Positions 36,462 through 60,500 of a DNA stretch of 64,000 bases are shown here, piece after piece. The stretch is from Ophelia neglecta (lineage: Eukaryota). The notes under the pieces were generated by a model, which did no database searches, was not told the origin of the DNA, and saw only the letters and a program-made list of their open reading frames with translations. Where the stretch lies: the NCBI GenBank assembly GCA_965285935.1, contig OZ260663.1, forward strand, positions 55,986,001 through 56,050,000, in the 5' to 3' direction. Numbering within the stretch: position 1 is the first letter of the stretch; each line of letters opens with the position of its first letter. The translations under genes were made by a program, and so were the position numbers.

Positions 36462-36525
36462 ATGGAAGGGAAAACTTTCGGTTATTTGTGTATACTCCTT
36501 GGCATTGTTGCCGGAGTCTGTGCAG
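36462..36525 (+). CDS. apolpp: Apolipophorin exon 1, signal peptide
   Basis: GCCACCATGG context; MEGKTFGYLCILLGIVAGVCA(G) |gtaaat. Confidence 0.88.
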
Positions 36526-39500: not shown

Positions 39501-42500
39501 ATTTATCAATTTATCTCGCATTTTGTAGCTGCGGGACGTGACTCTAGAAAACTCCGACCCACGTGACCTGTCCCGGTTGAGGGCCTCCGACAACCAAAGA
39601 GATTTTAAAAATGCACTCGAGTCCAGGCCGCTAAGGTATAACATTTAGTTACCTTTTTTACCTTAAAGATACGTATATCGAACACTGTAAATAAAGTAAG
39701 AACAATTCTTTATATGTATAATTATTAAGTCTGGGGTTAATAGAATTGTTGTAATGAATGTATAGGTTAGAGACTCCCTGACTACTGTTTTGTTTCCAAC
39801 CGTGTTCACTGCCGCCCAAAAAGTTGATTCATTTTTTGCCAGAAAACTTGTCCTCTTTTCTGCCACTTTGGCAAAACTTTGAAAAAAGGGTTATCACTTA
39901 AATTCAGAAAGTCTCCTTCTTCCTCCACATGGCACATCTGTTCACTCAAGACTTTCTCAACTGCAGGGTGTAAGAACCACTCAAATTTTACCTCCTCTGC
40001 GCCAGCGGTCCCTTTGCTACTGGCTTTAGGCTCAGTAGACATGTGTGCTGGGCTCTTACGTTTGTTGCTTTCAGTGTTAGTTGTCATATTTTCCTCCCCA
40101 CACATTAGGCCTCGGGCTTTTTTTCTTTAATAAGTCCTGGCTGTTTACATCCGCCCTGATATTTGATCCACAGGAACTAACCATTTTCTTTTAAATGTGA
40201 GCCTATTATGACGAAAAAACTAGAGGAACAGACTTGGACCAATGATTTGGATCCAGAGTAAACTCCCAGTGTGTATATCCCAGTGTTGTGCGGTGACTTT
40301 CCTTTGTATATGATATTTTCTATTAAATAACGAAACAACTTTATAATGAATTAATATGATTTTGTCCCACTTTCTTTTTCTATGCCATGTGCTCCGATTC
40401 ACAAAATATAAAAATAATAAAAAATACCAGGCATAAATCGACTTTTCGGCAGGCAAGCCTGCCTTCATTGAGACCTTATATGTGTCGGTCTAACTATAGA
40501 TAAGCTGTGGTTTAAATACATATAATATATATAAATAGGCCTATATATGCTTTTCTTATCTAATTTTCTTTTAGAATAATATTTATCTTTATCTTGCTTT
40601 GACCGAGTGGGAGAATGTGTTTTTTTCAATACAGATCCGTAAATTAATTGAATTTATATCGATGTTATAACCGTTGTATATAGGTTTGCCTTTCAAAATG
40701 GCCGTGTTGATGCCATTTGCGCAGCAGACGACGAGCAGCAATGGACTCTTAACATTAAGAGGGGAGTATTGTCTGCCGTCCAGAACTCTATGAGTCATCT
40801 GGAGGTAGACGAAAAAGTGCAGGAAGTAAGTTTATAGGTCTTCCTAAGAATGTTTTAAATTATGATTATCAATATTTCAAACCTACGAGGACTTCCAACT
40901 GTTCATTGTTCAAAAATAGCCGCAAAACAAAATCATTGAGACAAAATATTACTAGTAATCATTTTAACTATGTCTTAACTAGGCCCTATAGCATAATCAG
41001 ACCAATTACATATCAGTGATAAACGCAATATTAGGGTGGTCGTGTTAGTTTATTCATCCTTTGCCTTTGACTACTTTGCACCGACTTCCGGAATTTGTGC
41101 ACATAGTGTATTGGTTACCATTGCAGACCGACGTTGCCGGTGACTGCGAAGCCGAATACAGGGTATCTAACAAGGGATGGAACAGTATTACAATCACCAA
41201 GTCTAAGAATCTCCTGGGCTGTACTGGTCGTACTAACGCCATTACTACCCTACAATCTACACCATACAGTGCCTCATCTGTAAGTGCAATGTGACTAATA
41301 TGATATCCTAGGCCCATGATCAAATATCTGCCGTAATAAACACGTGCATCCGCTTTTCTCTAATTTCAAAGATATTCTGTACCTGGCAACTTCAATTTTA
41401 GTAAATTCTCTTTTGAAAAAAATACCTTTAGTACAATCCGTAAACTGCAAAGATGGTCCTACATGGTCTTTGTAGTTTTAGCAAAGGTACAAATTTCAAC
41501 ATTATGCAATAACATTTTAATTAATTTGCAGGATATTCAGTCTCTTCCGTTGATGAAGAGTGAGCACTCCTGTGAGCAGACAATCTCCAAGTCAGGTCTG
41601 CTGCAGAAGAGCGAGTGTCAGGAAAATCACGTGTTCAGACCATTCTCCAATAAAGGCAGTGGAGCTGCTACCACCGTCCGCCAGATGCTACAATACAGCA
41701 AGGAGTATGGCTACATTCAATCAAGAAATGGTAAGTGTCTTTACGATCACGAGTACTCCTATAAAAGAGATATTTTCGGAAGTGACCTTTTGACCTGTCT
41801 TTTAATTAGAGCAAAAATAACCTCAGCTAGACCTGCCTATGTAGGTTAGGTCAACACTCAATCCCATGCAAAGAATTATACTACAAAAGACTCGATGTTA
41901 AATGTTATTTGATTTGAAGTAAAAATCACTAACAAAGCGATAAAGATAATATCGGGATAGACATTTAAAACCAATTATGCTGCTTTGTTTCGTTTTTTAA
42001 ACATTAAATCTTAATTGTTTCTAGCCCCTGCCGACCGCCGCACGACTCTTACTTACGAACATGAAGGTTCATCCGACACTGCCGATAGGAACGCACAGCG
42101 AGTGATGGAGAAGCTCCAACAGATCTGCTCCATCGAAGACGTGAGGCCAGAGACCCCCCGGCTCTTCAGCGAACTCGTCTACGCCATGAAGGCGCTCAAC
42201 ACATACAGTCTTCAAACCATCCACAACCGCGTGGAGACCAACAGAATGTGCAGCCAGAACCATGACATGGCCAAGTAAGACCGTCATCCATTTACCAAGG
42301 ATTGATTTTTCAAGGGTCGCAGCGTATATATAGATTATTCCGTATAGCTTCAACAGTTTGTATAATAAAACGTTGTGTTTTTCTTGTAGACGATTTTTCC
42401 ATGACGCCCTTCCTGCCATGAGTACGACAGCGTCTGTCAGCCTGATGCAGAAGCTGATTGTATCCAAGGAGATCACTGGTACCGAGGCCGATATGTGGCT

Positions 42501-45500
42501 CACCTCCCTGGCCTTCATCGCACAGCCTACTCAGCAGATGCTTGTCGAGATCAAGGTAGGTCATCCACGCCATACATCCATTGGACTTTATTTACAATGA
42601 ATCCGTACTACTTTGGGATTGAATCTACTGAGCTTGCATAAGCAAATGCATAGGCCAGGTTGAATGTTAAGTACAGCCACATAATGTAGGAATCTGAACC
42701 CGACTTTATTTGTTTTAGCCACTGTTAAATCTGCCCAAGGCCTTACTCTCGGTGTCCAGCATGGTCCACAGTTTCTGCAAGAACTTCGGCGACTGCGAAA
42801 CTAACATCGACGTTCGTGACATAGTCCGCACGCTCACCGAGGAGCTCGGTTACAACTGCCAGGGTGACAGACAAACGGTGACTACTTTCATCGCCATAGA
42901 GAATCAAATTTCAAATAATTAATCCAGAATTCACTGGAACGGATAAGAGCTAGTACCATTAACATACACATCGCAAACAAAAAGAAAATGCTTAGAAATA
43001 AACACAAATTAAACTCAATTATTGTTTAGGAGCATTGCACAATTAAATTGAGTTATTTATATCAAGAATGTTTTGTTTTCAATTTTGAACCTTTTCCTCG
43101 CAGATGTTGCTGACACTTAAAGCTCTCGGCAACATTGGAGTATCTGCCGGAGCTGTTGATACTATCACTCGCTGCACCAACCAGGCCAGCCCCGTCGACG
43201 TGCGTCTGGCAGCCATCAACTCCTTCCGACGCCTCGACTGCGCCCAAAACGTGAGTAGAATACTTTACGTACAACGGAATTTAATGTGTGCGCTATAGGC
43301 CGGCAGAGTCTGTAGTTGAGCTTTGTGTATGATTTCACTTTGGGCTACAGCTATAAGTTCCATATAAACATTCTACCTATTGTTGTTTCCTACAGCGCAT
43401 GGAACTAAGAAACATCTTCGTGAACATGGAGGAGGATTCAGAGGTTAGGATCGCCGCTTACCTCTCCCTGATGCAGTGCCCATCTGAGGAATTGGTCGCT
43501 CTGATCAAAGACAAGCTGGACAGCGAGGAAGTTAACCAGGTCGGATCCTTCGTCTGGACTCACCTGACCAATCTCCAGGAATCTGCCGGAAACTTCAAGA
43601 AGGAGGTCAGGAAGATCCTGGAAGATGAGACCCTCAAGAAGACATTCAACACGGATGCCAGAAAGTATTCTCGAAACTACGAGGGATCTTTCTTCTTTGA
43701 CAGCCTGAACACTGGCGCTATGGTTGAGAGCAACCTGGTCTGGTCCCCGAAAAGCTTTGTTCCACGATCTGCTAATCTTAATCTAACCATTGACCTATTC
43801 GGTCAAAGCATGAACCTATTTGAGTGGGGCGGTCGGGTGGAGGGTCTAGAGAGCTATCTAGAGGCCTTTTTCGGCCCCAACGGATACTTCCCAGACAATG
43901 CGGTCTCTGACGCCCTGAAGAAGCAGAAGAAAGCCGCAAACAACCGCCTATCATCCATCAACGACAAGTACAACGCCAACATGGACGAGCTCAGGGGTTC
44001 AGCTTACATGAGAATCTTCGGAAACGAGCTAGCCTTCTGGGATTACTCTGGATCTGGAAAGCGCGGGGAGAAGGAACAATTCAACTTCCTTGAGTTCTTG
44101 ATCAAGCTGGCCCAAGACCACCAGATGGAGTACACCAAGAGCTTCATGTTCCTCGACTCCGAGGTTCACATCCCCACCGTGATCGGTATGCCCCTGAAGT
44201 TGTCTGTCAATGGCACAGCCACCATCGACCTGAAGGTTGGCGGCAAAATGGACATCCGCAAGGCAGGCGCCAGCCCCAGCTCCTTCGACATCAACGGCTA
44301 CGTCAAACCAAGGTCAATTAACATCCAACTTCTCATTTATATTTGAACAAAATGCCCCTTTTTTGAGCAGCTTAGAATCAAAATATCTTTAAAACCACAT
44401 GAATCCGCATTTACGAGGATATAAATGCCCATAGCCAAGGCAAATAGAACAATTTTTCACCAAATTCCCTTTTTTGTATCCAACTAAATAAAGTTCAAAG
44501 TAATATTTTAATTTGCTGCTGATTAACGTAACTTGACGAGAATGTTTTGTTGTGTTAACAGCGGTGCAGTAGAGATCTCCGGAGTGATGACAATGGACGC
44601 CACCGTGGCCCGTAGTGGTCTCAAGATGGTCACCACACTTCACTCGAGCACCGAGATGGATGGTCAGCTCCAGCTGAAGGACAGCAAGGCCTTTAACATA
44701 AAATTCAACATGCCCAAAGAAAAGATGGAAATCTTAAATGTCCAGTAAGTTTATTCGATACATTCCTGACTCAGTAGTCTCTTATTTCCAATCTATAGAT
44801 TCATAGCCAAGTGAAGATAAATGAAAACATATATATATATGTGCAAAAGAATAATTGACTACCCAAGGGATAACACTAAGCAAATACATGGGTATATTCT
44901 GTCCCTGCTAAAATTACTATTCCATGTAAAGTGTTATCCCTTTAAATAAAGCTCAGTGGCGGTTTTGTTATTTACAACATCTTTGGGCCAATAGTTGTGA
45001 TTAAATGGAGGTGTGTCGGGACAAGAGGTATATGGTGATGTTATTTCGCCGCAGGACTCAATTTTTCATCATGGACCGTGACCAAGAGCGTGAACAGAGC
45101 ATGCCAAACACTCCCCGTGTCCAGAAGAACATGTGTACATGTAACGGCCTGACCACCCTGCTAGGTGTCCAGCTGTGCGGGGACGTATCCTACCCAGGCC
45201 GCGGCAGCCAGGAGGAAACTCCCTACTTCCCCTTCAATGGCCCCCTCAACGCCTCCCTCGCCCTCTACCGCCGCGACACCCACCAGTCTTATGAGTTTGA
45301 GGCTCGTGTTGAGGCTAAGAAGGTAACGTTCTATTCCACAGCATGATAGCAGTTGAAGAACAAAATCTCTGAAGCTAAATATAAAAAAAACTAAAACGAA
45401 TTACAGCTATTTTGAGGCAGGGGGTGTTTTACCCCCATGCATAATGGGCAATCCATAATAAGCATTTTGGACGAGTTATAATTAGACTAAAGATGAATAA

Positions 45501-48500
45501 GCGGTTTCTTTCTTGCAGGAGCGCCTTAATGGAGTTGTCGGCTACACCAACATTGCGAGGTTGGCCTTCAACACCCCCGGCTCCCAAGTAGACCGCGAAC
45601 TTCTTCTCGACTTCAACCTCAACAAATTGGCAAAAACACTGAATGCTGAAGTACGATCTCCATGGAAGCGAGCTTCTGCTACTGGTAATCTATTAGGCCA
45701 TAGTCCCATGGCGTCTTTAAGTTGATTGTTGTACTGTTTGTTGATTTTTCCGAAGCAGTTTTAGCAACAAGGCTAGTTAATGGGTCATATTTATGAATTA
45801 CATTTACTCAATAAAATGGCCATTGATTTAATCAGTAATTCCGGTGATTATACAGAAAGCATCACAGATTATAAAATGAATAGACAGTGAAGGCTATTTC
45901 TGTTTATACGAAGGCACTTTCGAGAAATGTTTTCAAAACACTTCATTATTATTAATTTGAGCTGTTTTATTCTCATCAAGGTGCCTTGGTGACCGATGCC
46001 GACGCCAAGCGTCTGACCTTCACCGCCGATATGGACGGAGAACAAATGATCTCTGTGACCGGTGACCTACAACAGGAGACTGTAGCTAATGGACGCCGCT
46101 ACATGCCAACCGCCGAGGTTCGTTTACCAGGCCGCAAGCCAATCAACGCCCGTGCTAGCCTGAGCTTCCAGCCCGGCAAGGAGTACGACGCCGATTTCTC
46201 TTTGGATAATGTCTTTGACACGACAGTGGCCGTGAAGGGTAAGCTCGTTTACCACCCGCTTGTGTGTGTGTGGGGGGGGGAAGGGTGTATCATTTGTTTT
46301 ATTTGTAAACAAATATGAAATATGTAAAATATCAACAAATTGATTTCAGTCGTGTCTGATTAGTTCTAACAGTTTATAGACCTATAGTCAAGGGTTTGTA
46401 CAAAGAGAAGCTTGAATTTCAATATTGTATCACTGATCAGCATCCAACATGTGTTTGTGCTCATTTCCTTTATTTACCCATTTTTGTGCTCAGGCAAAGT
46501 TGAACAGAAGGGAAGTAAAGATGAGGTCCGTTTCGACACAGAGTTTGAAGTGCAGACACCTGTTTTCAACACCAAAATGAAAGGCTTCGTCGAGAACAAG
46601 AAAACATTAGCCCGGTCCCGCCTGGAATTTGGCTATGACTTCGCCTCAAAGACAACTCACAGTTTTGTACTCAACGGAAAGTTCAGAGACCAGTCGAAGA
46701 AGAATAATCTGCAGTACAGCTCTGTCTTGTACGTTCAGTACTTGAAATACTAATGGCCTACAATTTGCCATCCAATCAACTTAACATTGCCTTTTCCACA
46801 TTTCAGAATCTATAGCTCAATTATCAAATGTTTAACAGTGTATTTTTCCCATTGTGCAGCGCTGTACAGAGTTCCCAATTTCCCGACTACCAATTTGACA
46901 TCGATGCCAATATGAAGAAGACCAACAGACACTTCGAAAACAAAATAGAGATCCAGTATGGCGCGGACAGCAAAGATTACTCCAAACGTATCGCATTCTC
47001 ACAGGAAGCCAATCTGGTGCAAGGCGATGAGCTGCAAGCCGACCATTCAATGAGTCTCAAAATCAAACCGCTGGTAAGACTTCGTTATTAACACCAAGGC
47101 CTTTGAAAACCGGACTTCTCATATCTGTCTTTTTAGAAATATTTCTTTATAATAGGCAACAATATTTCCATTTTGCTTTGAGTTGATACAACACCAATAA
47201 AAAAGCTATAGTATTAATAATGTGTTCTTCCAGAGCATCATCATGACCAGCCGCATTGAACATTCACACAGTATGAATGAACTTAAGACCAAGGGCATGT
47301 TTAGTTATACACCTGGTAAGGAGATCTCAGTGGATCTTGGCCTAAAGCGGGACACAAATGACCTGATGAAAATGAACGGGAACCTTCTTGTGACCATCCC
47401 CAACCGCGAGATTAAGCTGATGACCAATTTGGAGGAGACCCAGGTGGACACTTTCAATCACGAGATGACCGCTCAATGGCGTAGCGATGCCCAGTTCCGC
47501 ACCATGACCACCTACAGCCGTGTACTATCGCAAGGGCGTCACGAATTCCGCTCCGAGATATTTCCACCAACAAACGAAGCTATAACCGTCACTGGCCTGA
47601 CGGTTCTTGATGTCAAGGACTTCCAAGCAAAGTTCCAGGCTGACCTCAATGAAAAATCATACGGAGCAGGCATTAACTATAATTTTGACCTAAAAAAAGA
47701 TGTATCAATCGGTGTAAATCTGGATGCTTACTGCCCAGCCAGGCACATAAGCTTTGACGCCAAAATAGATGGTTCTAAGAATGTATATCGCCTTAAGTCC
47801 AACACCCAGTGGGATGCTGACCGGGATTCTACAAAGCAAGTTACAGTCGTCGGTACCATGGACAACCTGGAGAGTGCCAACCTGAAGGTTAACTACCCAG
47901 GCCGTAAGATTACCCTTAACCTGAAGCAGAAGATGGATCAAAGCAAATTCAACGCACACGGGGACCTGTCCTGGGATGTTGGCAGTAGTATCACATTCGA
48001 CGCTGACTACAATTACAAGTTTGGTTACAACAGCAAGGCTCTTCAGGGATCCATCGCTTTGGATACACCATTCAAGTTTGCTAGGGAGCTTAAACTGGCC
48101 ATTGACCACAATAACGACCTTACTGACTCCTCTTCCAAGCTAGATATTACCTACGCTCCGAGCAAGACAATCACCACTCTTATTGTTGGCAAGCGGGTTA
48201 ACGGTTGGAGACAGATGGAAAATAAACTGACACTGACTACCCCTTTCGTCGCCCTCAGTACATTCAGCTTGGCCACGACTCACGAGATTGCTGACACAGA
48301 AATGAATGTCAATGTAGCCATTGCACGCAACCAAAACATTGTCAACATCGACCTCCTGGCTAAGAATGAGGCATTCTCAAATATTGAAATGAGAGCCAGT
48401 CTGAAGTCTAACCTACCTAGAATGACAAGTGCTAGCCTACATATGACCCACGTAGCCCGGAATCAGCAGATGCAGTCCCGGCTGAGCGGAGATTGGGAAG

Positions 48501-51500
48501 GCGAGGTTGTTACATTGACTGTCAACGGAAAGAATCAGGGCTATTCTGGTAAACGGGACCTAGAAGGCAAGATTATTTTCACATCTCCATTCAGTTCTAT
48601 GAGAGAGATCTCCATTGGCGGATCCCACAATGATGATGGCCGCACTTTTGAAACTGCAATGGAAACTACCTGGGCACCCAACAAGAAAGTGTCTGTAACT
48701 CTTAATATGGCAAACAGCGATAAGGGCGATTGGAGAATCCAAAACTCTGGAAGCCTGACTGTCCACACTCCCTTCGCAAGCGCGGAGAGGATCAACGCTC
48801 AATGGAACCAGAACTTCGATCACGGTCGAATAGTTTCAAGCAATATTCTTCAGTGGAACAGAGAGAAGCTGTCTCTGTCCATCGACAACACTTACACAAT
48901 CTCCACCACGCGCGATATTGTCAGTAACATTGCCTTTGAGAGCACTTTCAGCAATCCTCGTGATGCCAGCTTAAATATCCGCTACAACATCGGATCCTCT
49001 TCCTTAAAAGGCACCATCGGTGTAAACCACAACGGTGCCAATGACATTACCCTTAATGTCGATCTGTCACACCAGCAGTTTAGAAATTTTGCCGGAAAAG
49101 TTACCACCAGCAGCAGTTACTTCACAACCGTCACAACCGATGTTGATGTTCAGACGTTGACAATGCCATACACCAGCCACTTCGAGATGACATACGATAG
49201 CAAGAAGATTAGCTTGGACACACAGACTACTTATAACGGTTTTGAGCTCATCAAAGGTGAAATCCGTCTGGTCTCTCCATTCAGACAATTTGAGCGTGTC
49301 GTTGTCAACGTGGACCACATCAGGCAAGGTCAAGTGTGGAATAGCAAAGCGAGCGTTGCATATTTATCCAAAACATTTGCTGTTGAAACGGCATTCGAGA
49401 CGGAAGGTGAAAGATTGACGAAAGCTAATGTAAATCTCTTTACGCCATTCGAGCAACTGAAGTCGTTCAGGTGGAACATAAATCACTCGAGCAACGAATT
49501 ACAAGGTAACAGCGTTATTAACTACAATGACCTGCACACCCTCGAGTCCAGCTACATGTACCGTGGAGCCCTCGCTTCTGAAGTCCGCGTTTATTACAAT
49601 GGCATTATGGGATTCAACGCCCGGCATACGTATGATGGCGCCACCTTCGACCTGACATCGGAAATTCAGCTGAGTAGAGACGATAAGATTGCTTTGAGCA
49701 GCAAGCTGAGTCAAGAGGCCCTGACTCTTAATCTTCAGACCCCGTATGCTGCCCTGCAGAGCGCTGACCTTTCTGTCAACCATGACGGTGATATCCGAAG
49801 ATTCTCCAATTCCGTATTTGCCTCTGTAAAAACCATCCCCGGTAAGATTAAAATCGTCAGCAAATTGAGAGCTTCCGGCCTGAACTACATAGATGGACAG
49901 ATGGACTTCACTAGTCCATTTGAGTCTTTCGAATCGATTTCCATGAGTGTTTCTCACAAAAACAGAAGAAGTCAGGTCACCACTTCTGCGTCAGTAGACT
50001 ACCCATACCAAAAGAAAATTGAGATGAATGGCCAATACGACAAGACCACGTATGAAGGAAGCGTATCTCTGAAGACACCATACTATGACGACATTATTTT
50101 GTCCGGTGGATTTTTCAATGGAAACGCCAAGGCTAGTCTACAATATGCTGCTGATAAAACCATTGACATAAGGGCTAGCATGCAGGCCGACGATAAGGTT
50201 GCTTATGATTTCATGGTCACAAGTCCAAGCCAATGGCTGAAGTCCTTGTCTGCAAGATTTGAACACGCCGGGCCAATCAACGACTTTGCTACCAGGGCCG
50301 TGCTTAACTACGACAGATTTGGTGGTGCCATTGATAGCAACGTTGCCTTCAAGATCCAAGAGGCAGATATTGAAACTAGCGCCTCGATAAAAACACCTTT
50401 CCAGAGCTTCCGAGATGCTAGCTTACGTTTATCCAACAAGGCCGTCGGCTGGAAGAAGTACGAATCAGCCATTAGTAGTTCCTTCCAGAGCAGTAATGTT
50501 TTTGATATGAAATCCACTGTGAAAATAGGCTCTCTGGAAAGTTTCAATGGCGATGTTTCTCTCAGCACGATGTTCCAAGAAGTTAGGTCAGCTGCTTTGA
50601 CCTTCGGCCACACTGGATCTTTCTCCCGATTTGCCAACAATGCCAAGTTCACGTTAAACAGAGACCAGTACAGCTACGAAGGCAACTTTGTCGCTGACAG
50701 CACCATATCCGGTAATTTCAAAGCTAATGATCTGGCACTCACATTCAACCATAACGGAGACCCAAGGAACATGCGTTCAGCCGCCAAAGCAACCTACGGC
50801 AGGGGTAAAACCATTTCAACTTCTGCCACATTCCGTTTTGATGGTGATCTAGACGCCAAGGTTGAATTTACGGCACCGTTTTCAAGAGATGTTGTAGCCA
50901 CCATTTCGCACACCGGTCCTATCGACAGCTTCAGGCACGTGACTCAAGTCAGCTATGGTGGCGAGCGCACTATCATTACTGGTATTTTTCAACTCAAGCC
51001 AACCATCGTTGGTCAGTTTAAGCTAGAGTCTCCCTTCGCTGAAGACGTTGAAGCGTCCTACACTCACTCTGGTTACGCTAAGGCTTTTCAGACTACCGGC
51101 TTTGTGCGTCTAGGAGACAAAACAGTCGAGGCCACCGCTGATGTCGACGTCCGCTCTGGTATCACCACTAAGCTAACCTTCAATAGCCCATTCCCTCGTT
51201 TTGAGACCATCACTTTTGATATGTCCCACGCAGGCAGTATGGCCCCATTTACTTTTGCCACCAAAGCGGGTCTGACCTATGCTCCATCCAAGACTGTGTC
51301 TGCCTCTGCAAATGCCAAGGTCGTCTCCGGCGCTGTCGATGCTCATTTCAAAATCAGTTCTCCTTGCCCCGTAGTAAGGGACAGCGAAATAAACCTCGTA
51401 TACAACAACCAGGGAACACCCTTAGACTTTCAGGTCGACATTGACGCCAGCGTTAACTCTGAAAAGAAGATTGTTGCCCATGCTGATATGCAGACTAGGG

Positions 51501-54500
51501 GACAGATATCTGGAAATCTGAGACTGGAGACCCCAATTCCGGGTGCCGAAAGTACTACTCTTATATTCAGTCACAAGGGAGATGTTTCTGACTTCGAGAC
51601 AAACGTGGTGATGTCCTATGCTCATGGCGAGATGCGTGGTGATGTCACGTTCAACGACAGCCCTGTATCTGCTACACTCGCACTAAGAACACCTTACACC
51701 AGTATGAAGGAAGCCACTCTGACGGCTAGCCACTCTGGTAATGGCTACGGATTCAACACCGAAGCTAGTTTCCGACACAACCTGCTCGGTGCATTCACCT
51801 ACAATGGTCAATTCACAACCAGAAATAACATCAAAGGTGAGTTCACAGTTAATACCCCATTCCAGGGATACGAGAACATGTACTCACGCTTTAGTCACTG
51901 GACCCAGACACCCGGGTTCAGTTCTGCGGCCGAGATGGGCATCGGGGAGAAGGTTGTAAAGGCCAATGCTGAGTTGACCGTGGATTCTAATATACAGGCT
52001 ACTGCCACTCTACAAACCCCTTTCACCCCGGTCAAGGACTTCGTGATCACACTGACCCACGACGGTGGCTTAAGGAACTTCCAGACTACCATGCAAGTCG
52101 ATCTCAACAGGGAAAGACAGGTTGAGGCACAGGGCTCTTTAAATACTGACACTACCATCAATGGCAACTTCAACATTATCTCAAAATTCGGTAGACACAG
52201 AGTTACCTTCAGGCATTCCGGTGATATCAACTCAACGGTAGAGACGAGCGGCATGATTTCTTACCCGGGTGGTGAAATTAACGGAGATCTTAACCTGCAG
52301 ATTCGCCCTGAGTTAGATGGTACCTTCCATCTGAAGAGTACCATCCCTTACCTTCGAGACATGACCATCGTAGCCAAGCACGGCGGATACAGTGGCAGCT
52401 CCTTTACATCTGAACTCACCTTCAGCCACGACATTCTTGGCAGATTGACGTATAGCGGAACCCTGAGGACGAACCCATCTATCAATGGCTTATTTACCAT
52501 TGAAACACCATTTCCAGCAATCAGAAACATGAATTTGAAATTTGGTCACAATAGCGATAGTTCAAAGGTACAGACGAACGCCGAGGCAACCTACAACGGG
52601 ATGACCTATTCGGCCGCAGGAGATCTTAAATTCAATCCCAGCGTAGATGGTTCCCTGCGCATTTACACACCCCACACTATGCTCCGTGACTTCAGCCTTG
52701 TCGTCTCCCACAACGGTGACATGAACGAGTTCAAGAACAATTTTGGACTTACGTACAACCGTCAACAGATCGCTCAAGCAGAGGGCTCTTGGACAAGAAA
52801 CCCTATCCAAGCCAGCATAAGTGTCAGCACCCAAAGTGACTATCTCAGATCTCTGCAGCTAAAGGCTAGCAGCCGAGGTTCCAGTGCCGACAGGCAAACA
52901 TCTGCCAGCGTGAACTATAATGGGCAACAGATCGCCAATGGAGAAATGAGCCTTAAATCCAATCCTGCCGTCCAGGGAACGCTGCAGATTAACACCGTGT
53001 GGTCTAATATCAACGACCTGTTTGTCTCAGTGAACCACAACGGCGATATGTCTGCTTTCAATTGCAACGGCCAGGTCAGATATAATAACGAGCACACTTT
53101 TGAGGGTACCGCTGAATTCTCCCAGGCTCCATTAAAGGGCAAGATTACTCTAAACACACCTTTCCAAACAGTCAGAGACCTGAGCGCAGCTTTCAGTCAT
53201 GATGGTAACTTTGACAGATTCCAAACCCATGCCGAATTCAGTCATGCAAGCAACAAATACGAAGTGGATGGCTCCTTCCAAAGCAGTCCGTTGAAGTTCA
53301 CTTGTGGTATAAAAACACCTTTCGAGGGTGCTCGTAACCTAAATGCAATGTTTAAACATAAAGGCGACATGGAAAAATTCTCCACACACGCTGAGACCAG
53401 CCTTGACGGGTACCAGTGGCAGGTTGATACCACATTCCAGCGCCTTCCATTAGAGGTTAACGTTGACGTGAGAACGCCATTAGGTGGCTACCGCAAGATG
53501 AACGCTGCTATCACACAGACCGGAAACACTGCCCACGCTGAGCTGAGCTGTGGAAGAAACAAAATCGAGGCCGACGGTTTCCTCCAATTGCAGCCCCTGA
53601 ACGCCAACATTGTTCTCAAGACTCCCTTCCGAGGCGCCAAGAAGCTGAATGCTGCTGTCAAGCATAATGGTGATCTTAGTGCATTTCAGTCTCATGCCGA
53701 GGCCGGGTGGGAAACTGGTCGAGTAAGCGTAGATGCTGCCTTCAGCAAATATCCACTGCAGGGAAGCTTCAATATCCAGCTGCCAATCCGCGGTGCTAAC
53801 AAGATCAATCTGGCCTTCAACCGCGAAGGAAAGAACGGCCATATTGAAGGAAGCTGCGACTACGCCAAAATAGAGGTTGATGGATCTTTCCAGCCCGAGC
53901 CCTTAGAAGCTAACATCCACGTACAGACTCCCTGGGAGGGCGCCCACAACCTGAAAGCAGCTCTTAGACACAATGGAAACCAGGCCCATGCCGAGGCTAG
54001 CTATGATAATGGTAAATTTGAAGCTGATGGTAGTTTAGAAATTAGTCCCTTCAGAGCCGAATTGAATGTAAAGACCCCATTCCAAGGATTTACTAACATG
54101 TTTGCTACACTGAAGCATGATGGCGACAGGAATGCTTTGCAGACTAATGCCGAGGCAAGTTATGACAATGGCAAATTCGAGGCTGCCGGAACTTTCCAGC
54201 GTCGCCCACTTAATGTTCAACTGAACGTCAAAACCCCATTCGATGGTGCCCGAAATGTCAACGCCGCTTTCAACCACCGTGCCTACAGAGGGACATTTAA
54301 TTCCCACTACGAGACTAGCTTTGACTACGGCAAGTATGAGGCAGACACTTCTCTTACCATTGACCCATTGACGTATGAACTGAGTATCAAGACTCCCCAT
54401 GCTGGTTACACCAACATAAACGCCATATTGACCCATACCGGGGATTTGGAAGCCTTCGAGACTCATGGCGAAGCTACTTACGATTACGGCAAAATTGAAG

Positions 54501-57500
54501 CCGATGGTTCCTTTAGACAATTTCCCCTCGAGGCTAAATTTGGTTTGAAAACTCCTTTCCCTGCTGCACGCGACGTTAACGCTTTTGTCAGTCACAGCGG
54601 AGACGCCGAAGCCTTCCAGACCCTTGTTGAGGGAAATGTCAACAACCAGAAGGCTGAGGCCAAGGCCATCTTTACCCGCCAACCCATGCAGGCAAGCTTT
54701 ACTATGAAAACTCCATTTGATTACGCTCGTGATATCCAAGCCACTGTTAAACACGAGGGAGACATGAGTGGGTTCGAAACCAAAGCTGTTGTTGGCAATG
54801 AAAAAGGCAAGTTTGAAATTCTTGCAAATGCTCAACGTCGACCACTCGGTGCCAAGCTAACCATCAACACACCAATCCAAGGCTATGAGCAAATGGGACT
54901 AGAACTGAGCCACAAGGGCACTATGAACAAAGCTTTCCGCTCCCAGGCATCTGTCAACTACCAAGCGGGTAAAACTATATCCCTTGAGGCCCAATACAAG
55001 AACCTTGGCCGCCTTGTCGGTAATGTCCAGCTCACAACCCCATTCAGAGGCTACGAATCTATTGGTGCCAGCGTGCGCCATGACGGTGACATGGACGGTC
55101 TTAGATCTAAAGCTGAACTAACCTTTGGAAGTAAAACCCTCTCTGGAGATGTTGACCTGAAATTTCAGCCTAACGTTCAAGGCACCGTTCAACTGAAATC
55201 ACCGTTATCTGGACTGGAAGAAGTGAACATCAATGTTCATCATAAGCTAGACGCAAGCTCAGTTGACTCGAAGGTCTCCTTGTCTACCCCAAGTGGCGAA
55301 ATCAACGTAGCAGTGAACGGACAGTACACTAATCTCTTGGATATGAGCGGCTCTATGTCTGTATCGTCCCCTATCAAGTCAGTTTCCGTCAGTGGCAAAA
55401 CCCATGGCAGCCCCAGCAACATTCGCGCTGAGATTCAGGCCACAAGCGATGGTAAGGTGATGTCAATGAGTGCTGATGTACAGACCACACAGGGCCTGAA
55501 AGTCAATGTGGTCGTCAACACATCCTTCGCCGGGTATGAGGAGCTGACCTTTAACCTCGACCACCAGGGAACCATTGGCCAGTTTGAGACTTCTGCTGCT
55601 CTGAAGAACGGCCGCAGAGCAATCACCGCCAGTGCTCAGATACAGACTGACAGACAGATAGTCTTCTCGGCCAATGTACAGACTCCATTCCGTTCCTTGT
55701 CCCAGGCTAGCGTCAGTCTCAACCATGCTGGCAGCATCCAACGATTCAGAACAAATGTCCGCTTTACATGCAACAATCAAAAGCCCATGACAGCCGGTGT
55801 TACTTTTGTGAATGATCGCCAATTCCAAATGAATTTCGACCTCAGCTGCCCATACGTCGAGGGCGTCTCTCTTACCATGAACCACGAAGGTCTCATTAGC
55901 CGCTTCAACTCCCAAGCATCATTAAAGAATGGCCGGGACGAGTCCACCGTCAAGGTAGATTTCCAAATGGTTGAAGGAGTGACCCTAAAGACCGAAATCA
56001 CCTCACCCTACATGGAAGCTCCAATCAACGTCGAGCTGACTCACGAAGGCAACATGAATGCTTTCACTACCAAGGCTTCGGCTAATGCCATCAGGGCTGA
56101 CGTCACATGGACCAGCAACAACAACTATTTAAGCCTTAAGGCCGGCATTGAATCTCCAGCCTTTGAGAGGATTGATACCGTGTTCACGTTGAACGGAAAC
56201 ATGGCTAATTTGCAGGCCAATGCCGACATATCATATTCACGTAATCAGAAGATCTCCACCAATATAGTTTACAACAGCAACAATGGTATACCTGTAATTG
56301 TTGAGGCTACATTCACTAGCCCCTTCAAAAATGCAGAAAATCTTGCTCTAGACCTGAAGAATACAATTAGCTACGGAAAATTCAGTTCCCGTGGAAGTTT
56401 CAGCTGGGCAACCCGCCAGGCCATCAACATTCAAACGGTCGGCAGGTATGCTGGTTCACTAACGGACCTAAGCATCAGTGGCTTCCTGAAGGTCAAGACG
56501 CCGTTTACTGCTGTCCGGTCCATGGTACTCAACCTGAACCATGCCCACCGTGCCAATAGTCTAACAAGCAAGATTGACATGGGCGTTAATGGACAGGATA
56601 TCCTGGATGCTGAAGTCCAGCTAAGTCCAAGCAGCGGCAGCCTCATCTCCCGTCAGCCCCATCCCGCTACAGCCAGCTATGAAGTGCAAGGTGACAATTC
56701 CAACATCGCAGTCAACTGGAATACGGCAAGCCGAGACAGCAACATTCGCATGGAGGTAACAAACAAGGACGAAAGCTCTTACTACCGGACCAATCGAGTC
56801 CTAGCTGTACGTACCATCACTCCCACTAGGACTATGTCATTGAGCGCCGATCTTGACTGGAGCAAGCAGACTTTCATCCAGAAAACCGCTTTGATATGGG
56901 ATGCCAGCCAGGAGAGAGAGTTCTCTTATGAGATCAACCTGAACGACCGCTCCCGTCGAGGGCAGAATATCTGCGATGGGAGTGTCCGTCTCAACACCCC
57001 AGTGCGCAGCTTCGAGGTACAGGGTTCACACAATGACGACTCCAGGACCTTCACCACCAAGGCCACCTTGAAGTGGGATGCCGCCCGTGATGAGACAAGG
57101 ATGTTGACTCTGTCAAACACCTACCAGACCATCGGCAATGAGCATGTCGCCCAGATCACCATCGCTCACCCATCTCTAAACAAGGTAAATAAATACTGTT
57201 CTATTAAAAAATAAGATAAAATCTTCAATGGTATATCCGTGTTTGCAATTGAAAAATGTTTCAATAAGTTACTATAACTACATTCATAAATTGTGCATGT
57301 TAATATAAACAGCCACATTACGTGCAAGCTTATGGGAAAAATGTATGCTATTTTCTGCAGGACATATCTCTTCGTAACTCGTTCACCCTGAACGACGATA
57401 AAATTATGTTTTCCGGACGTACCGAGATCGAATACAGCGACAACGCCGACGAAACAATTGTCCTAAGCGCAAATGTGGAGAACAAGGACTCAAACTACAC

Positions 57501-60500
57501 TATGACGCTGAATATTGCCCATCCTGTTAACGCCATCGATGTAGGCATCATAGGTAACGGGGCCAACACCCGTGATGTTATGACCGCAGGACTGAACATG
57601 CGCTATATGAATGCCCGCCGACAGACCGAAATGTACCGCCTCCTCGGCCAGATCGAAAAACTAAGGAAAAGCTTGAAAATGGAGGTAGGCCTATTAACCA
57701 TCAGTGCTAAAGACCGAACAGCAAGAGCCTAAGTCATTTCTTCAGAAAAAAATGCATCCTTTTGCTTCAATGTGATTAATTTGCATTGGTATCGAGCATT
57801 CATTAATGTACAGTAATTCATAACATATATTTCAGGCCACAATTAAAAAAACGCAATCAAATTATAGGCCTAAAATTTACTCCTTATACTATGTAGCTGG
57901 ACAGTCCCATGAAGAAACTGGAGGTTTTCGGAAAAGTAACGCCTACTTCGGATGGATACTCCGGAAACTTGGTCGCCAAAGAAGACAATGAAGAGAAAAT
58001 GAGCGCAACAATAAACGTTGGAAAGAATTCAATGAACCTCGAGGCCCATCTAAACCCTGGTGAGCCTAATACCCACTGGTCATATCCATAGCATACCGAC
58101 AGGGGGTGTTATATAATTGTTTGAATAGGCTATAACGAAGTATTTCCGATGATGCCATGCATATCAAATGAAATCAATATTTTCCAATTCGTTATAATTA
58201 TTATGTTCGTATTGCCAAATTAACAAATTTGGCATATGGTCTTGTAAAATTAATCCCTAGATTTTTAAAAAGGCGGAAAACATTTACTTTAGAACAATTG
58301 ATGAATCAATACGTCCATACAAATACAAATACTATATTAGTGTCTCATCCCGCCCACAGAGAAGCCAGAGAATCTGTTGCACATCAGTGGAGAATATCAG
58401 AGCCCAGTCAACATGAAAATGGATGTCTACCGCCATATTGATGGCAGCCCTATCTCCGACACCAATGTGGCCTTTGATCTGAAGAACCGCCGTCTGCTGC
58501 ATTCCCGTGTCTACCTTCGTCCAGGTATGACCGATGACGTGCTAGCCAGTGCTGCCGACACGGCTTTCCGTGCCAACCGTAAGCTAGCGCTGGTGTGGGA
58601 GCAGGCCAGCAATAAGGTCCAGGAAGAATACCGCCAGAAAGCCTACATCATCCAGAGGAACCTGCCAAACATGACCCCAGTCACTGATTACCTAACCGCA
58701 GAGGCTGCCAGCTTCCGCCGGGACGCCCAGGCTATCGAGCGCGCTTGGACTAGAATGTACTACAACAATGAATTCTACGTGAGAAGCATCGAGTCCGCGG
58801 CGAAGAGCACAGCAGAGGCGCTTAGTGAATTCTGTGCCCAACAAATGGGCAAGATCAGAACGTGTCTGCAGCGAGTAGCCACGACCATGTCCGAGAAGAC
58901 AGCCGCAATCCGATTATGGTGCGCTGAGATATGTAATAATCTCACCGCCAATGCCCTTCTAATGTCTCAAGCGGTCTCTGACCAGGCTGCTGTCGTCTAT
59001 GAGACAATGATGGGCCAATACGCCGTGGTCAACCACGCCTTCCTCATCAAATATAACTCTGCACAGGCATGGGCCAAGAACCAGACCGACATTATGAAGG
59101 TGAAGGCCGTAGCAGCTCTGGAGAGAGCCATGGAGGTGATTGCACCCTATGCTGAAGCCTATATCCGCTACTACAACCACGCCACGAAGTGGATCAACGC
59201 AAACAAGGAGAGGATCGCACAGAAGGCCGAAGGTGAGCATAGTCTTCTTAGAATGAGAAGACCGAAGAGTTTTCGAAATCAAATAAAACAATAATGGAAA
59301 ATCAAATGATATTGATTAAGATCGTTTCTTTTACTATATAATGACAAAAACCATTACCCTACAGAGCTGGCCGCTAAAATCCCATATGAGAAGATCGAGG
59401 CCGTTCTGGAGTATGCCTCCAGACGTCTGTCCCAGATTCAGATTCTCGCCGAGACTGCTTTCCAGCAGTACCTAAAAGTATACGGTGGCTTCCTGGAAAA
59501 AATCTCCGAATACGACTTCCTCAGACCCATCTACAATGTTCACCTAGAGGTGAGACCTAAATCTAGTTTAAACAAAACATCTATTAAAACTCAATAAATG
59601 CCTTATAAGTGGAAGGAAATAGCATCGTTGCTGTACAGCTGTACGACCGCATTTATATTTAGCTAAGGTGAACGACGAATGTATATATAATGGCCAGCTC
59701 GGAGCCATTTGTTTTTTTTACAGACGCCAGAATCGTTTGCCGTAATGGTGATATCGTTTTCCTTGATTAATTTCCCGATTTCAAAATTTATCATTAATTG
59801 ATTTTTTCCTTGAAGGTTGTTGAGAAAGTAGAAGGTTTGCTGGCTGCTCTCCAAGCCGCCTCCGATCGGCCCGTTCAGACCGCCAGATTAGTCCTGATCC
59901 GTAGCACTCGCATTGCAAGCCAAATCTCGGCCGAAATCATGGCAAACATTAACCAGGAGTACGTGGCCAACTTCGCCCAGGATATCATTGACAAGGTAAT
60001 GACATTTCTTTCACCAAGCAATAAGTCTTAAACTATGTTCTGCAAGGAGTTGACGTCATGGAAGTGTTATATTATAAGGTCATTGGGCATGCCGCTTCAT
60101 TCCGCTTAAACTTGTGTGTATGTATCGTAAATAAAAAAAGTATTATAATTCCCATCATCTTGCTTAACAGTACTATTTGAAACACACACTAGCTTAATGT
60201 TCCATAAACGTACCTGTTTGGTATCCTCGACAGACTCGCTGGGCTTACAACCACTACGAGATCGAGAAGAATGTACTCGGTGCCGTCAAAGGTTTGGCCA
60301 GCTCCGGCGTCCGATTCGTCAAGGACAACGCCTTTTACCTGGTCAACGACTACCTCGGCCTGGAGAAGGACCGCCTGATAGCGTACAACCCCAGAGGAGG
60401 AGAGCTTGAGTTTGAGCTTTACGTGCCCACCGACCTTCCCAGTCTAACTCATGTTCCCGTGGAGGGAGTAACTGGTCTCTACAACAGTCTAAAGAAGGCA

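What the first reader, a model, noticed from the sequence alone, without database searches (positions are those of the whole stretch)
47234..57184. Modular beta-belt built from a ~49-56-aa four-strand repeat: a possible molecular ruler for lipoprotein size
Seen: most of the 3,317-aa exon is a degenerate tandem repeat with approximate consensus hxhxTPFxGhxxhxhxhxHxGxxxxFxxxAExxYxxxKhEhxGxFxxxPh. It shows strict alternation of hydrophobic and polar residues and about 40 clear TP/SP-aromatic turns. Known: apoB-100 wraps LDL with a continuous amphipathic beta-sheet belt, and crustacean HDL/beta-glucan-binding protein derives from the middle of an apolipophorin-like precursor. Inference: the belt here grew by duplicating a 4-strand unit, so repeat number would set particle circumference. 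This could be an undescribed repeat family and a visible record of how LLTP belts evolved.
Basis: partly seen in the sequence, partly recalled or inferred. Interest (0 to 1): 0.8.

Follow-up and report, generated by a model that had tools for sequence, protein, structure and literature searches.

The report
Repeat-built lipoprotein beta-belt, one giant exon
One 9,951-base exon of an invertebrate apoB/apolipophorin-type gene encodes about 54 tandem copies of a 53-residue, four-strand amphipathic unit, predicted to form a continuous lipid-wrapping beta-belt most like that of human apoB-100; the same unit is detectable across protostome lipoprotein genes and seems never to have been described.

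Summary
Window 47234-57184 is one splice-bounded, stop-free exon of 3,317 codons. It holds about 54 degenerate tandem units with a 53-54-aa period, against about 0 in shuffles.

The gene is an apoB/apolipophorin-type large lipid transfer protein: Vitellogenin_N, open beta-sheet and DUF1081 upstream, VWD and C8 downstream.

AlphaFold models of 6 and 12 units (pLDDT 94.9 and 89.5) give exactly four strands per unit in one uninterrupted antiparallel sheet. For the 12-unit model, human apoB-100 is the top Foldseek match (E 2e-7, probability 1.0).

The unit is not special to this genome:
- It is strong in mollusc, annelid and nemertean homologues.
- It is weaker but reciprocally detectable in crustacean dLp/HDL-BGBP precursors.
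- It is undetectable in apoB-100 and insect apoLTP.

Growth by duplication is supported by a lineage-specific burst of 11 units. No Pfam family or paper I could find describes the unit.

The "molecular ruler" idea is untested here. It has a precedent in apoB truncation work, and proposed belt sliding in apoB-100 weighs against a strict form.

Two side findings: N-glycosylation sequons are depleted more than tenfold in the belt, and a second gene on the same chromosome carries a shorter belt.

No expression data were available.

The parts
36462..36530 (+). Candidate first exon: start codon followed by a signal-peptide-like hydrophobic stretch. The exon end was not determined.
   Evidence: hydrophobic run, mean Kyte-Doolittle 2.85. 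No signal-peptide predictor was run, and the splice link to the next exon is not shown.
37974..44316 (+). Exons of the N-terminal lipid-transfer module (Vitellogenin_N and open beta-sheet/DUF1943). Matched pieces: 37974-38156, 40682-40834, 41121-41300, 41532-41750, 42021-42275, 42295-42555, 42719-42904, 43101-43283, 43384-44316.
   Evidence: tblastn of Capitella, Babylonia, Mya and Crassostrea homologues, 35-52% identity. Pfam PF09172 E 9e-58 and PF01347.
44560..47001 (+). Small exons between the N-terminal module and the giant exon, including DUF1081 (45041-45340). Matched pieces: 44560-44763, 45041-45340, 45510-45695, 45980-46246, 46846-47001.
   Evidence: tblastn. (PF06448, 34.7 bits, cut-off 25). 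Weak unit traces at 46145-46222 and 46891-46968.
47234..57184 (+). Giant exon, 3,317 codons: about 54 tandem four-strand amphipathic beta units with a 53-54-aa period. This is the predicted beta-belt.
   Evidence: repeat and splice sites. (AlphaFold2, 4 strands per unit). (apoB-100 is the best full-length structural match).
53147..54859 (+). Block of 11 units (exon aa 1972-2542) that are each other's nearest relatives at 42-48% identity: a lineage-specific duplication burst.
   Evidence: Most units outside this block are closest to units of other species.
56948..56959 (+). R-S-R-R, the only furin-type motif in the giant exon (exon aa 3239-3242). A candidate processing site after the last regular units.
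   Evidence: motif only; cleavage not shown.
57358..60961 (+). Downstream exons of the C-terminal region (57358-57690, 58356-59117, 60228-60614, 60827-60961). An R-M-R-R motif lies near 59250.
   Evidence: Weak unit traces at 57451-57516 and 57951-58049.
61228..62782 (+). C-terminal von Willebrand D and C8 domains (61228-62370) and the last matched exon (62474-62782).
   Evidence: PF00094, 47.5 bits, cut-off 22.9; C8 below its cut-off..

Best explanation
The stretch is the single giant exon of a secreted apoB/apolipophorin-type large lipid transfer protein from an animal whose relatives are molluscs, annelids and nemerteans. It encodes the lipid-associating beta-belt. About 54 tandem units each contribute four roughly 10-residue antiparallel strands, joined by three tight turns (H-x-G, N/G-x-G, x-P) and one 7-residue T-P-F loop. 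The strands alternate hydrophobic and polar residues. Given the predicted hairpin registers, all hydrophobic columns fall on one face, so the sheet should lie on the lipid surface as the apoB-100 belt does. By analogy with apoB, the N-terminal module would nucleate lipid loading in the ER and the belt would be laid onto the growing particle as it is translated. The belt was built, and its length still changes, by duplication of whole four-strand units. The unit is ancestral at least to the protostome apolipophorin and dLp/HDL-BGBP lineage. Shown here: the repeat, the gene family, the unit's distribution and the duplication burst. Predicted with high confidence: the four-strand unit and the continuous sheet. 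Inferred: one-sidedness, lipid binding, co-translational assembly, and a single-wrap belt of about 104-120 nm.
For: Gene family: Vitellogenin_N, PF09172 (9e-58), DUF1081 and VWD in colinear exons. Repeat. Structure: the 6-unit model has pLDDT 94.9 and 24 strands; the 12-unit model has pLDDT 89.5 and 48 strands with no helix of 4 or more residues. Foldseek on the 12-unit model puts apoB-100 9ea7/9e9r on top (E 2e-7, probability 1.00, TMq 0.32 against 0.16 or less for the next folds). In VIA, only apoB-100 9bde spans the whole model (558 aligned residues, positions 1-620), while barrels cover about half. Every other strong match is also a single-layer meander sheet. Family-wide unit: 7-59 units in mollusc, annelid and nemertean homologues. 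A 53-56-aa lag is the top autocorrelation peak in Astacus and Scylla dLp/HDL-BGBP, mantis shrimp, thrips, nemertean, Capitella and oyster. A crustacean-trained HMM finds 24 units in this exon. Selection and secretion: 3,317 codons without a stop; a signal-peptide-like first exon; N-x-S/T sequons 4 against 46 expected. The giant single exon is conserved in a homologue with only 23% identity. Geometry check: 120 strands x 0.48 nm = 58 nm, which matches the circumference of the 18.5-nm LDL.
Against: There is no expression or protein evidence for this gene, because no RNA run holds it. No lipid was present in the models, and their global shape is uncertain (pTM 0.47 for 12 units). AlphaFold curls part of the sheet to barrel-like curvature (VIA Z 14-16 to LptD, TonB-dependent and usher barrels). 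Sequence profiles do not connect the unit to apoB-100, so the belt analogy rests on gene architecture and predicted fold. One-sidedness was deduced from DSSP strand limits and column hydrophobicity, not measured on coordinates. The alignments used for folding consist of repeat frames from seven loci (the window and six homologue loci, L001-L006), so they are not independent orthologues.
Confidence: 0.8

Rival explanations
1. The repeats do not wrap a particle as an open belt. Instead they close on themselves into one or several very large barrels, a spiral shell, or the wall of a lipid cavity, as in vitellogenin or lipid transfer particle cavities or the YD/Rhs shells of teneurins. Lipid would then be held inside a protein container.
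For: VIA ranks 22-26-strand transmembrane barrels highest for both models (Z 14-16). Teneurin and Rhs shells are the next Foldseek hits after apoB-100. pTM 0.47 shows that the global arrangement is not determined.
Against: The barrel matches cover only about half of the 12-unit model, with rmsd 22-26 A. Only apoB-100 aligns end to end and leads Foldseek by two orders of magnitude in E-value and twofold in TM-score. The gene has the full apoB/apolipophorin domain order. A sheet of more than 200 strands has no plausible closed form other than around a large lipid body.
Confidence: 0.1
2. The protein's main role is not bulk lipid transport but pattern recognition, clotting or another defence role. 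The repeat sheet would serve as a binding surface, as proposed for the crustacean beta-glucan-binding fragment and the clotting proteins of the same superfamily.
For: The unit is shared with dLp/HDL-BGBP precursors. The protein ends in VWD and C8 domains, which mediate multimerisation in clotting proteins and mucins (established knowledge).
Against: In the crustacean precursors the units are concentrated in the dLp fragment, with only about 4 detected in the BGBP fragment. The strict hydrophobic/polar alternation over more than 2,500 residues fits a lipid-facing sheet. VWD is standard in apolipophorins and vitellogenins. A defence role could coexist with lipid carriage.
Confidence: 0.07
3. The locus is a non-functional or unexpressed duplicate, and the repeat is a relic.
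For: No RNA data are available. A second gene of the same kind lies on the same chromosome.
Against: There are 3,317 codons without a stop, intact splice signals, conserved unit motifs, colinear intact flanking domains, and a sequon depletion that only selection in the secretory pathway would maintain.
Confidence: 0.03

Closest known systems
Beta-belt of human apolipoprotein B-100 (PDB 9EA7, 9E9R, 9BDE; PMC11839476)
   Same: Both belong to genes with the same domain order (Vitellogenin_N, open beta-sheet, DUF1081, then a very long beta region). Both are continuous antiparallel amphipathic sheets of roughly 10-11-residue strands about 4 nm wide. It is the best structural match to the 12-unit model. 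Both belts are poor in N-glycosylation sequons (snake apoB). From memory, human APOB also encodes most of its belt in one 7.5-kb exon.
   Different: The apoB belt has 120 strands interrupted by nine inserts totalling 1,779 residues, and no sequence repeat is reported for it. Here there are about 216 or more strands in regular 53-aa units, with no helical inserts in the modelled 627 residues. The unit profile finds nothing in apoB-100. apoB has no C-terminal VWD in the Pfam listing.
Crustacean dLp/HDL-BGBP precursor (Astacus leptodactylus, Scylla paramamosain; PMC8416765)
   Same: It is an LLTP of about 4,830-4,890 aa with the same 53-56-aa period and the T-P-aromatic turn. It carries 26-31 units and detection is reciprocal. 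It is a biochemically characterised hemolymph lipoprotein precursor.
   Different: The units lack the H-x-G turn and are far more diverged (generic-HMM scores 6-23 against up to 60). Two furin sites release a roughly 1,100-aa BGBP fragment. Here there is no equivalent pair of sites at that spacing, and a VWD/C8 end is present that the Pfam listing does not show for the crustacean proteins.
Mollusc, annelid and nemertean 'apolipophorin' or uncharacterised LLTPs (e.g. Argopecten, Babylonia, Aplysia, Crassostrea, Capitella, Tubulanus)
   Same: These are the true homologues: same domain order, same unit with T-P-F and H-x-G, 14-59 units, and a giant exon where DNA was available.
   Different: Belt identity is only 20-23% even to the nearest. 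Unit numbers differ, and bursts of duplication are lineage-specific (50-aa period in Babylonia, 56-aa in Capitella).
Repeating beta-groove (RBG) lipid-transfer bridges: VPS13, ATG2 and relatives (PMC7613979)
   Same: This is a conceptual parallel only: a long lipid-contacting beta-sheet assembled from a repeated multi-strand unit (abstract seen; the five-strand unit is from memory).
   Different: They are unrelated intracellular proteins that form a groove bridging two membranes, not a belt on a secreted particle. No sequence or fold match was seen here.
Large outer-membrane beta-barrels (LptD, TonB-dependent transporters, ushers, VDAC)
   Same: They have the same all-next-neighbour antiparallel meander with one lipid-facing surface, and the highest VIA Z-scores (14-16).
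   Different: They are closed barrels of 19-26 strands and cover only half of the 12-unit model at rmsd 17-26 A. There is no sequence relation, and the cellular setting is different.

Membership tests
[quoted passage not shown] | N-terminal lipoprotein domain (Vitellogenin_N / LPD_N) | tested here: met
   PF01347 matches in exons at 41463-41849, 42015-42278 and 43399-44346. Colinear tblastn to homologues from residue ~40.
[quoted passage not shown] | Open beta-sheet domain (DUF1943, PF09172) | tested here: met
   E 9e-58, 196 bits, cut-off 23.7.
[quoted passage not shown] | DUF1081 (PF06448), found in apoB and apolipophorins but not in vitellogenins | tested here: met
   34.7 bits, cut-off 25, at 45005-45346.
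[quoted passage not shown] | Very long amphipathic beta region after DUF1081 | tested here: met
   3,317-aa exon with alternating hydrophobicity. All-beta models. apoB-100 belt is the top structural match.
[quoted passage not shown] | Secretory signal peptide | tested here: inconclusive
   A start codon with a hydrophobic stretch at 36462. No predictor was run and no transcript links it to the next exon.
[quoted passage not shown] | Forms a circulating lipoprotein particle | not testable with these tools
   Needs biochemistry. No RNA or protein data are available for this organism.
Insect-type apolipophorin II/I precursor | Furin site (R-x-K/R-R) in the loop of the open beta-sheet region, near residue 711-721, which splits apoLp-II from apoLp-I | tested here: not met
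   At the aligned position the window has K-K-Q-K-K. Nemertean and Capitella homologues (and the unnamed JGI/IMG protein P0164) have R-x-K-R or K-R there, and the mollusc homologues also lack it. There is no R-x-x-R anywhere in that exon.
Crustacean dLp/HDL-BGBP precursor | Two furin sites releasing a central ~1,100-aa BGBP fragment | tested here: not met
   The only motifs are R-S-R-R (exon aa 3239) and R-M-R-R (near 59250), roughly 480 coding residues apart by my exon map.
Crustacean dLp/HDL-BGBP precursor | Shares the 53-56-aa four-strand unit | tested here: met
   (reciprocal HMM detection; shuffles give 0).
apoB-100-type belt | Belt interrupted by long, mainly helical interstrand inserts | tested here: not met
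   There is no helix of 4 or more residues in 627 modelled residues. Units abut with 12-14-aa gaps over aa 1755-2693. Irregular stretches elsewhere in the exon were not modelled.
apoB-100-type belt | Sequence homology of the belt itself to apoB | tested here: not met
   Profile against PDB sequences: no apoB hit at E up to 10. Unit HMMs find 0 units in two snake apoB-100 proteins. hhalign gives no signal above the reversed-sequence control. Non-detection is not proof of absence.

The most novel reading that the evidence does not exclude
Unit number is a heritable length setting for the lipoprotein perimeter. Each four-strand unit adds about 1.9 nm of belt. On that basis this gene (about 54 units, 104-120 nm) and its paralogue on the same chromosome (2,029-aa exon, about 73 nm) would specify two particle or disc size classes of about 33-38 nm and about 23 nm. 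Lineage-specific unit bursts would then tune particle size during evolution. The 53-aa unit would also be the ancestral building block from which all apoB-like belts, vertebrate apoB included, diverged beyond recognition.
Probability: 0.25. Interest if true: 0.75.

Novelty: new variant of a known kind. Interest (0 to 1): 0.58.

Why it matters
The apoB-100 belt was resolved only in 2024 and shows no sequence regularity, so its origin and the rules that relate belt length to particle size are hard to approach. Here the same kind of belt is written in a legible modular code. It has a 53-aa four-strand unit with defined turn motifs, folds with very high predicted confidence, and occurs in 14-59 copies across the mollusc, annelid and nemertean homologues counted here (fewer are detectable in more diverged members). 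Two lengths occur within one genome. This offers three things. First, a natural series for testing whether belt length sets particle circumference. Second, a minimal unit for structural, lipid-binding and design work, such as beta-sheet analogues of nanodisc scaffolds. Third, a marker linking spiralian apolipophorins to the crustacean dLp/HDL-BGBP precursor. The strong avoidance of N-glycosylation sequons in these belts and in snake apoB hints at a shared constraint on assembly in the ER.

Tried and rejected
- Alignment A1, made of overlapping repeat frames, was useless because MAFFT aligned the identical overlaps. It was replaced by non-overlapping frames (A2, A5).
- The weak DUF2804 and Adap_comp_sub Pfam hits in the exon are below their cut-offs and were treated as chance.
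- Tandem Repeats Finder sees nothing at the DNA level.
- phmmer of the exon and the 6-unit profile against PDB sequences gave no meaningful hit; the epsilon-toxin and designed beta-protein hits at E > 0.1 are compositional.
- Foldseek with the 6-unit model alone was ambiguous (E 0.025 for apoB-100). The 12-unit model resolved it.
- No DNA was available for P0003, P0019 and P0017. P0012 is not on record. P0008 and alignment A3 exceeded length limits.
- The look-up of sequencing runs returned three DNA-type holders from one sample and no RNA, so read laying was not used and expression remains unknown.
Flanking exons were searched one by one by reference, so I give no total protein length of my own.
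- Published dimensions of the Nereis and crayfish discoidal lipoproteins could not be retrieved from the held library, so no comparison with predicted belt length is claimed.


Full report
**1. The observation**

The window holds an open frame at 47222-57214 on the + strand, 3,330 aa without a stop. A pyrimidine tract ending in CAG lies immediately before 47234, and a GTAAAT donor immediately follows 57184. This gives 9,951 nt, or 3,317 codons in phase.

The protein is rich in Ser, Thr, Ala and Asn and has only 9 Cys. [TS]-P-hydrophobic occurs 43 times, mostly 49-61 residues apart.

- Residue identity at lag 53 is 10.7%, against a mean of 6.3% (sd 0.75) over lags 20-129.
- An HMM seeded with five units finds 36 units and converges at 50.
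- A generic unit HMM built from six species finds 54 units covering 77% of the exon, with median spacing 54 aa.
- One hundred shuffles of the exon give 0.01-0.03 units each.

There is no repeat at the DNA level.

**2. What the gene is**

The exons before the giant exon carry Vitellogenin_N, the open beta-sheet domain (PF09172, 9e-58) and DUF1081. The exons after it carry VWD and C8.

tblastn of full-length homologues maps a colinear gene from 37974 to 62782. A start codon with a signal-peptide-like stretch lies at 36462. This agrees with another first-stage note on the same gene.

The terminal modules are 35-52% identical to mollusc and annelid proteins annotated as apolipophorins. The belt is only 20-23% identical even to its nearest relative.

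All flanking exons were searched separately by reference.

The furin site that splits insect apoLp-II/I is not present at the homologous position, which reads K-K-Q-K-K here. The only furin-type motif in the giant exon is R-S-R-R at exon residue 3239.

**3. Structure**

I built in-register alignments from non-overlapping multi-unit frames, taken from the window and five homologue loci (L001-L005) for A2, with a sixth (L006) added for A5.

- Six units: mean pLDDT 94.9, pTM 0.75, 24 strands.
- Twelve units: mean pLDDT 89.5, pTM 0.47, 48 strands, no helix of four or more residues.

Every unit has four strands of 8-11 residues, three 2-3-residue turns and one 7-residue loop containing T-P-F.

Using the DSSP strand limits and standard antiparallel pairing, the hydrophobic columns (2, 12, 14, 16, 25, 29, 31, 33, 38, 40, 42, 44, 49, 51, 53 of the unit) all fall on one face.

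Foldseek results:
- With six units the search was ambiguous. apoB-100 had the highest probability (0.99) but E was 0.025.
- With twelve units, apoB-100 chains 9ea7 and 9e9r are the top hits: E 2e-7, probability 1.00, TMq 0.32, against 0.16 or less for teneurin shells.

VIA-align results:
- It ranks 19-26-strand barrels first (Z 14-16), but they cover only about half of the long model.
- apoB-100 9bde is the only target that spans the whole model (558 residues aligned, Z 8.4).

All good matches are single-layer meander sheets, and none is a sandwich. The global curvature of the models is not trustworthy (pTM 0.47, no lipid present).

**4. Distribution**

The unit HMM finds 7-59 units in every homologue from the word search, which are molluscs, an annelid and unnamed contigs.

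The exhaustive profile search finds 524 clusters at E <= 1e-3 and 193 at E <= 1e-30. Named members include a nemertean, an ostracod 'apolipophorin', a mantis shrimp and a caridean shrimp.

A second word search supplied a panel that includes the characterised Astacus and Scylla dLp/HDL-BGBP precursors, insect apoLTP, amphioxus, a sea star and two snake apoB-100 proteins. On this panel:

- The generic HMM finds 14-54 units in spiralians, 5-16 weak units in crustaceans, a millipede and a thrips protein, 2 in amphioxus, and none in apoLTP, sea star or apoB. Shuffles give 0.
- Without any model, a 53-56-aa lag is the top autocorrelation peak in the window, both dLp/HDL-BGBP precursors, mantis shrimp, thrips, nemertean, Capitella (z 14.6) and oyster. 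It is not the top peak in apoB, apoLTP, sea star or amphioxus.
- An HMM iterated only on crustacean precursors converges on 26-31 units per protein at 53-56-aa spacing. Most lie before the first furin site, in the dLp large fragment, and about four lie in the BGBP fragment. The same HMM recovers 24 units in the window exon.
- hhalign of the unit profile against apoB gives nothing above the reversed-sequence control.

The unit therefore predates the split of spiralians and arthropods. Its presence in deuterostome belts is not detectable by sequence.

**5. Growth by duplication**

Eleven adjacent units (exon aa 1972-2542, window 53147-54859) are each other's nearest neighbours at 42-48% identity. 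Most other units are closest to units in other species, often at similar positions.

Babylonia (50-aa period, z 10.5) and Capitella (56-aa period, z 14.6) show their own recent bursts. Unit number differs widely between species.

The same genome carries a second complete LLTP gene 6.6 Mb away, with a 2,029-aa giant exon and about 25-33 units.

The single giant exon is conserved in L001 (3,374 aa), L003 and L006.

**6. The ruler idea**

I first checked the arithmetic on apoB. With 0.48 nm per strand (standard sheet geometry), its 120 strands give 58 nm. That equals the circumference of the 18.5-nm LDL reported in PMC11839476.

Applied here, 54 units give about 104 nm, and the whole exon about 120 nm. 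That corresponds to a single-wrap sphere or disc of 33-38 nm. The paralogue would give about 73 nm, or 23 nm diameter. These figures are inference.

The principle that apoB length sets core circumference was published in 1992 (Spring et al., cited in PMC11839476). The same structure paper proposes that the belt slides past the N-terminal domain as particles shrink. A belt would then set an upper or preferred perimeter, not a fixed size.

Large discoidal lipoproteins with subunits of about 240-250 and 80-85 kDa are reported from a polychaete and a crayfish (PMC8416765). I could not retrieve their dimensions.

**7. Prior description**

Pfam (2025 copy) has no family for the exon. Full-text searches found no account of a four-strand or 53-aa repeat in apolipophorins, dLp/HDL-BGBP or apoB. 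The nearest thing is SMART's automatic 'RPT: internal repeats' label in a figure of snail LLTPs (PMC10799875). That paper also reports that the snail Apo genes are most highly expressed in the digestive gland.

Subscription papers are not in the library, so an earlier description cannot be excluded.

**8. Side finding**

N-x-S/T sequons number 4 in the exon, against 46.0 +/- 5.4 in shuffles (z -7.8). D-x-S/T, Q-x-S/T and S/T-x-N are enriched, as the alternating pattern predicts.

- The depletion recurs in all spiralian belts tested (1-8 observed against 26-60 expected) and in snake apoB (7 against 28).
- Among decapod precursors it is weaker in Astacus (15 against 31) and absent in Scylla (28 against 23).
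- It is reversed in insect apoLTP (32 against 18).

This supports passage through the ER and a constraint against glycans on the belt.

**9. Verdict**

The belt and four-strand-unit reading is well supported. The repeat is a family-wide, apparently undescribed module of protostome apoB-like proteins and is not a property of this locus alone. The ruler claim remains a hypothesis with precedent.

No expression data were available.

Noticed in passing
window 47234-57184; also L001, L006 and panel proteins: N-glycosylation sequons (N-x-S/T) are depleted more than tenfold in the belt: 4 observed against 46 +/- 5.4 expected (z -7.8). Control motifs with the same spacing are enriched. The depletion is shared by spiralian belts and snake apoB-100; among decapod dLp/BGBP precursors it is weaker in Astacus and absent in Scylla, and it is reversed in insect apoLTP.
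   Followed up: partly
G000:C5:62606231-62610961 (- strand), loci L012-L015: A second complete LLTP gene lies about 6.6 Mb from the window on the same chromosome. It has the N-terminal lipid-transfer module upstream and a 2,029-aa giant exon with about 25-33 units, so one genome holds two belt lengths.
   Followed up: partly
paralogue exon (L013) and Capitella P0008, millipede P0214: Some unit hits are spaced 26-31 aa apart, about half a unit, and Capitella shows secondary autocorrelation peaks at 29 and 26 aa. The four-strand unit may itself derive from a two-strand hairpin.
   Followed up: no
unit column 18 throughout window 47234-57184: The nearly invariant His of the H-x-G turn (28 of 33 aligned units) falls, by the inferred strand register, on the hydrophobic face at the belt edge. 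Crustacean units lack it. Its role is unknown; an interfacial or headgroup contact is one guess.
   Followed up: no
L001:10001-20125, L003:430-7887, L006:501-14378: Homologues that share only about 20-23% belt identity also encode the belt as one uninterrupted frame of 2,485-4,625 aa, so the giant exon is an old, conserved gene feature. From memory, human APOB exon 26 is a parallel.
   Followed up: partly
window 43357-44343: At the position where the nemertean and Capitella homologues (and the unnamed JGI/IMG protein P0164) have the apoLp-II/I-type furin site, this protein has K-K-Q-K-K and the mollusc homologues have no basic motif. Two-chain processing may not be universal in this family.
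   Followed up: partly
window 1-36000: The upstream 36 kb is AT-rich (GC 0.34-0.42 against 0.43-0.49 in the gene). I did not examine it.
   Followed up: no
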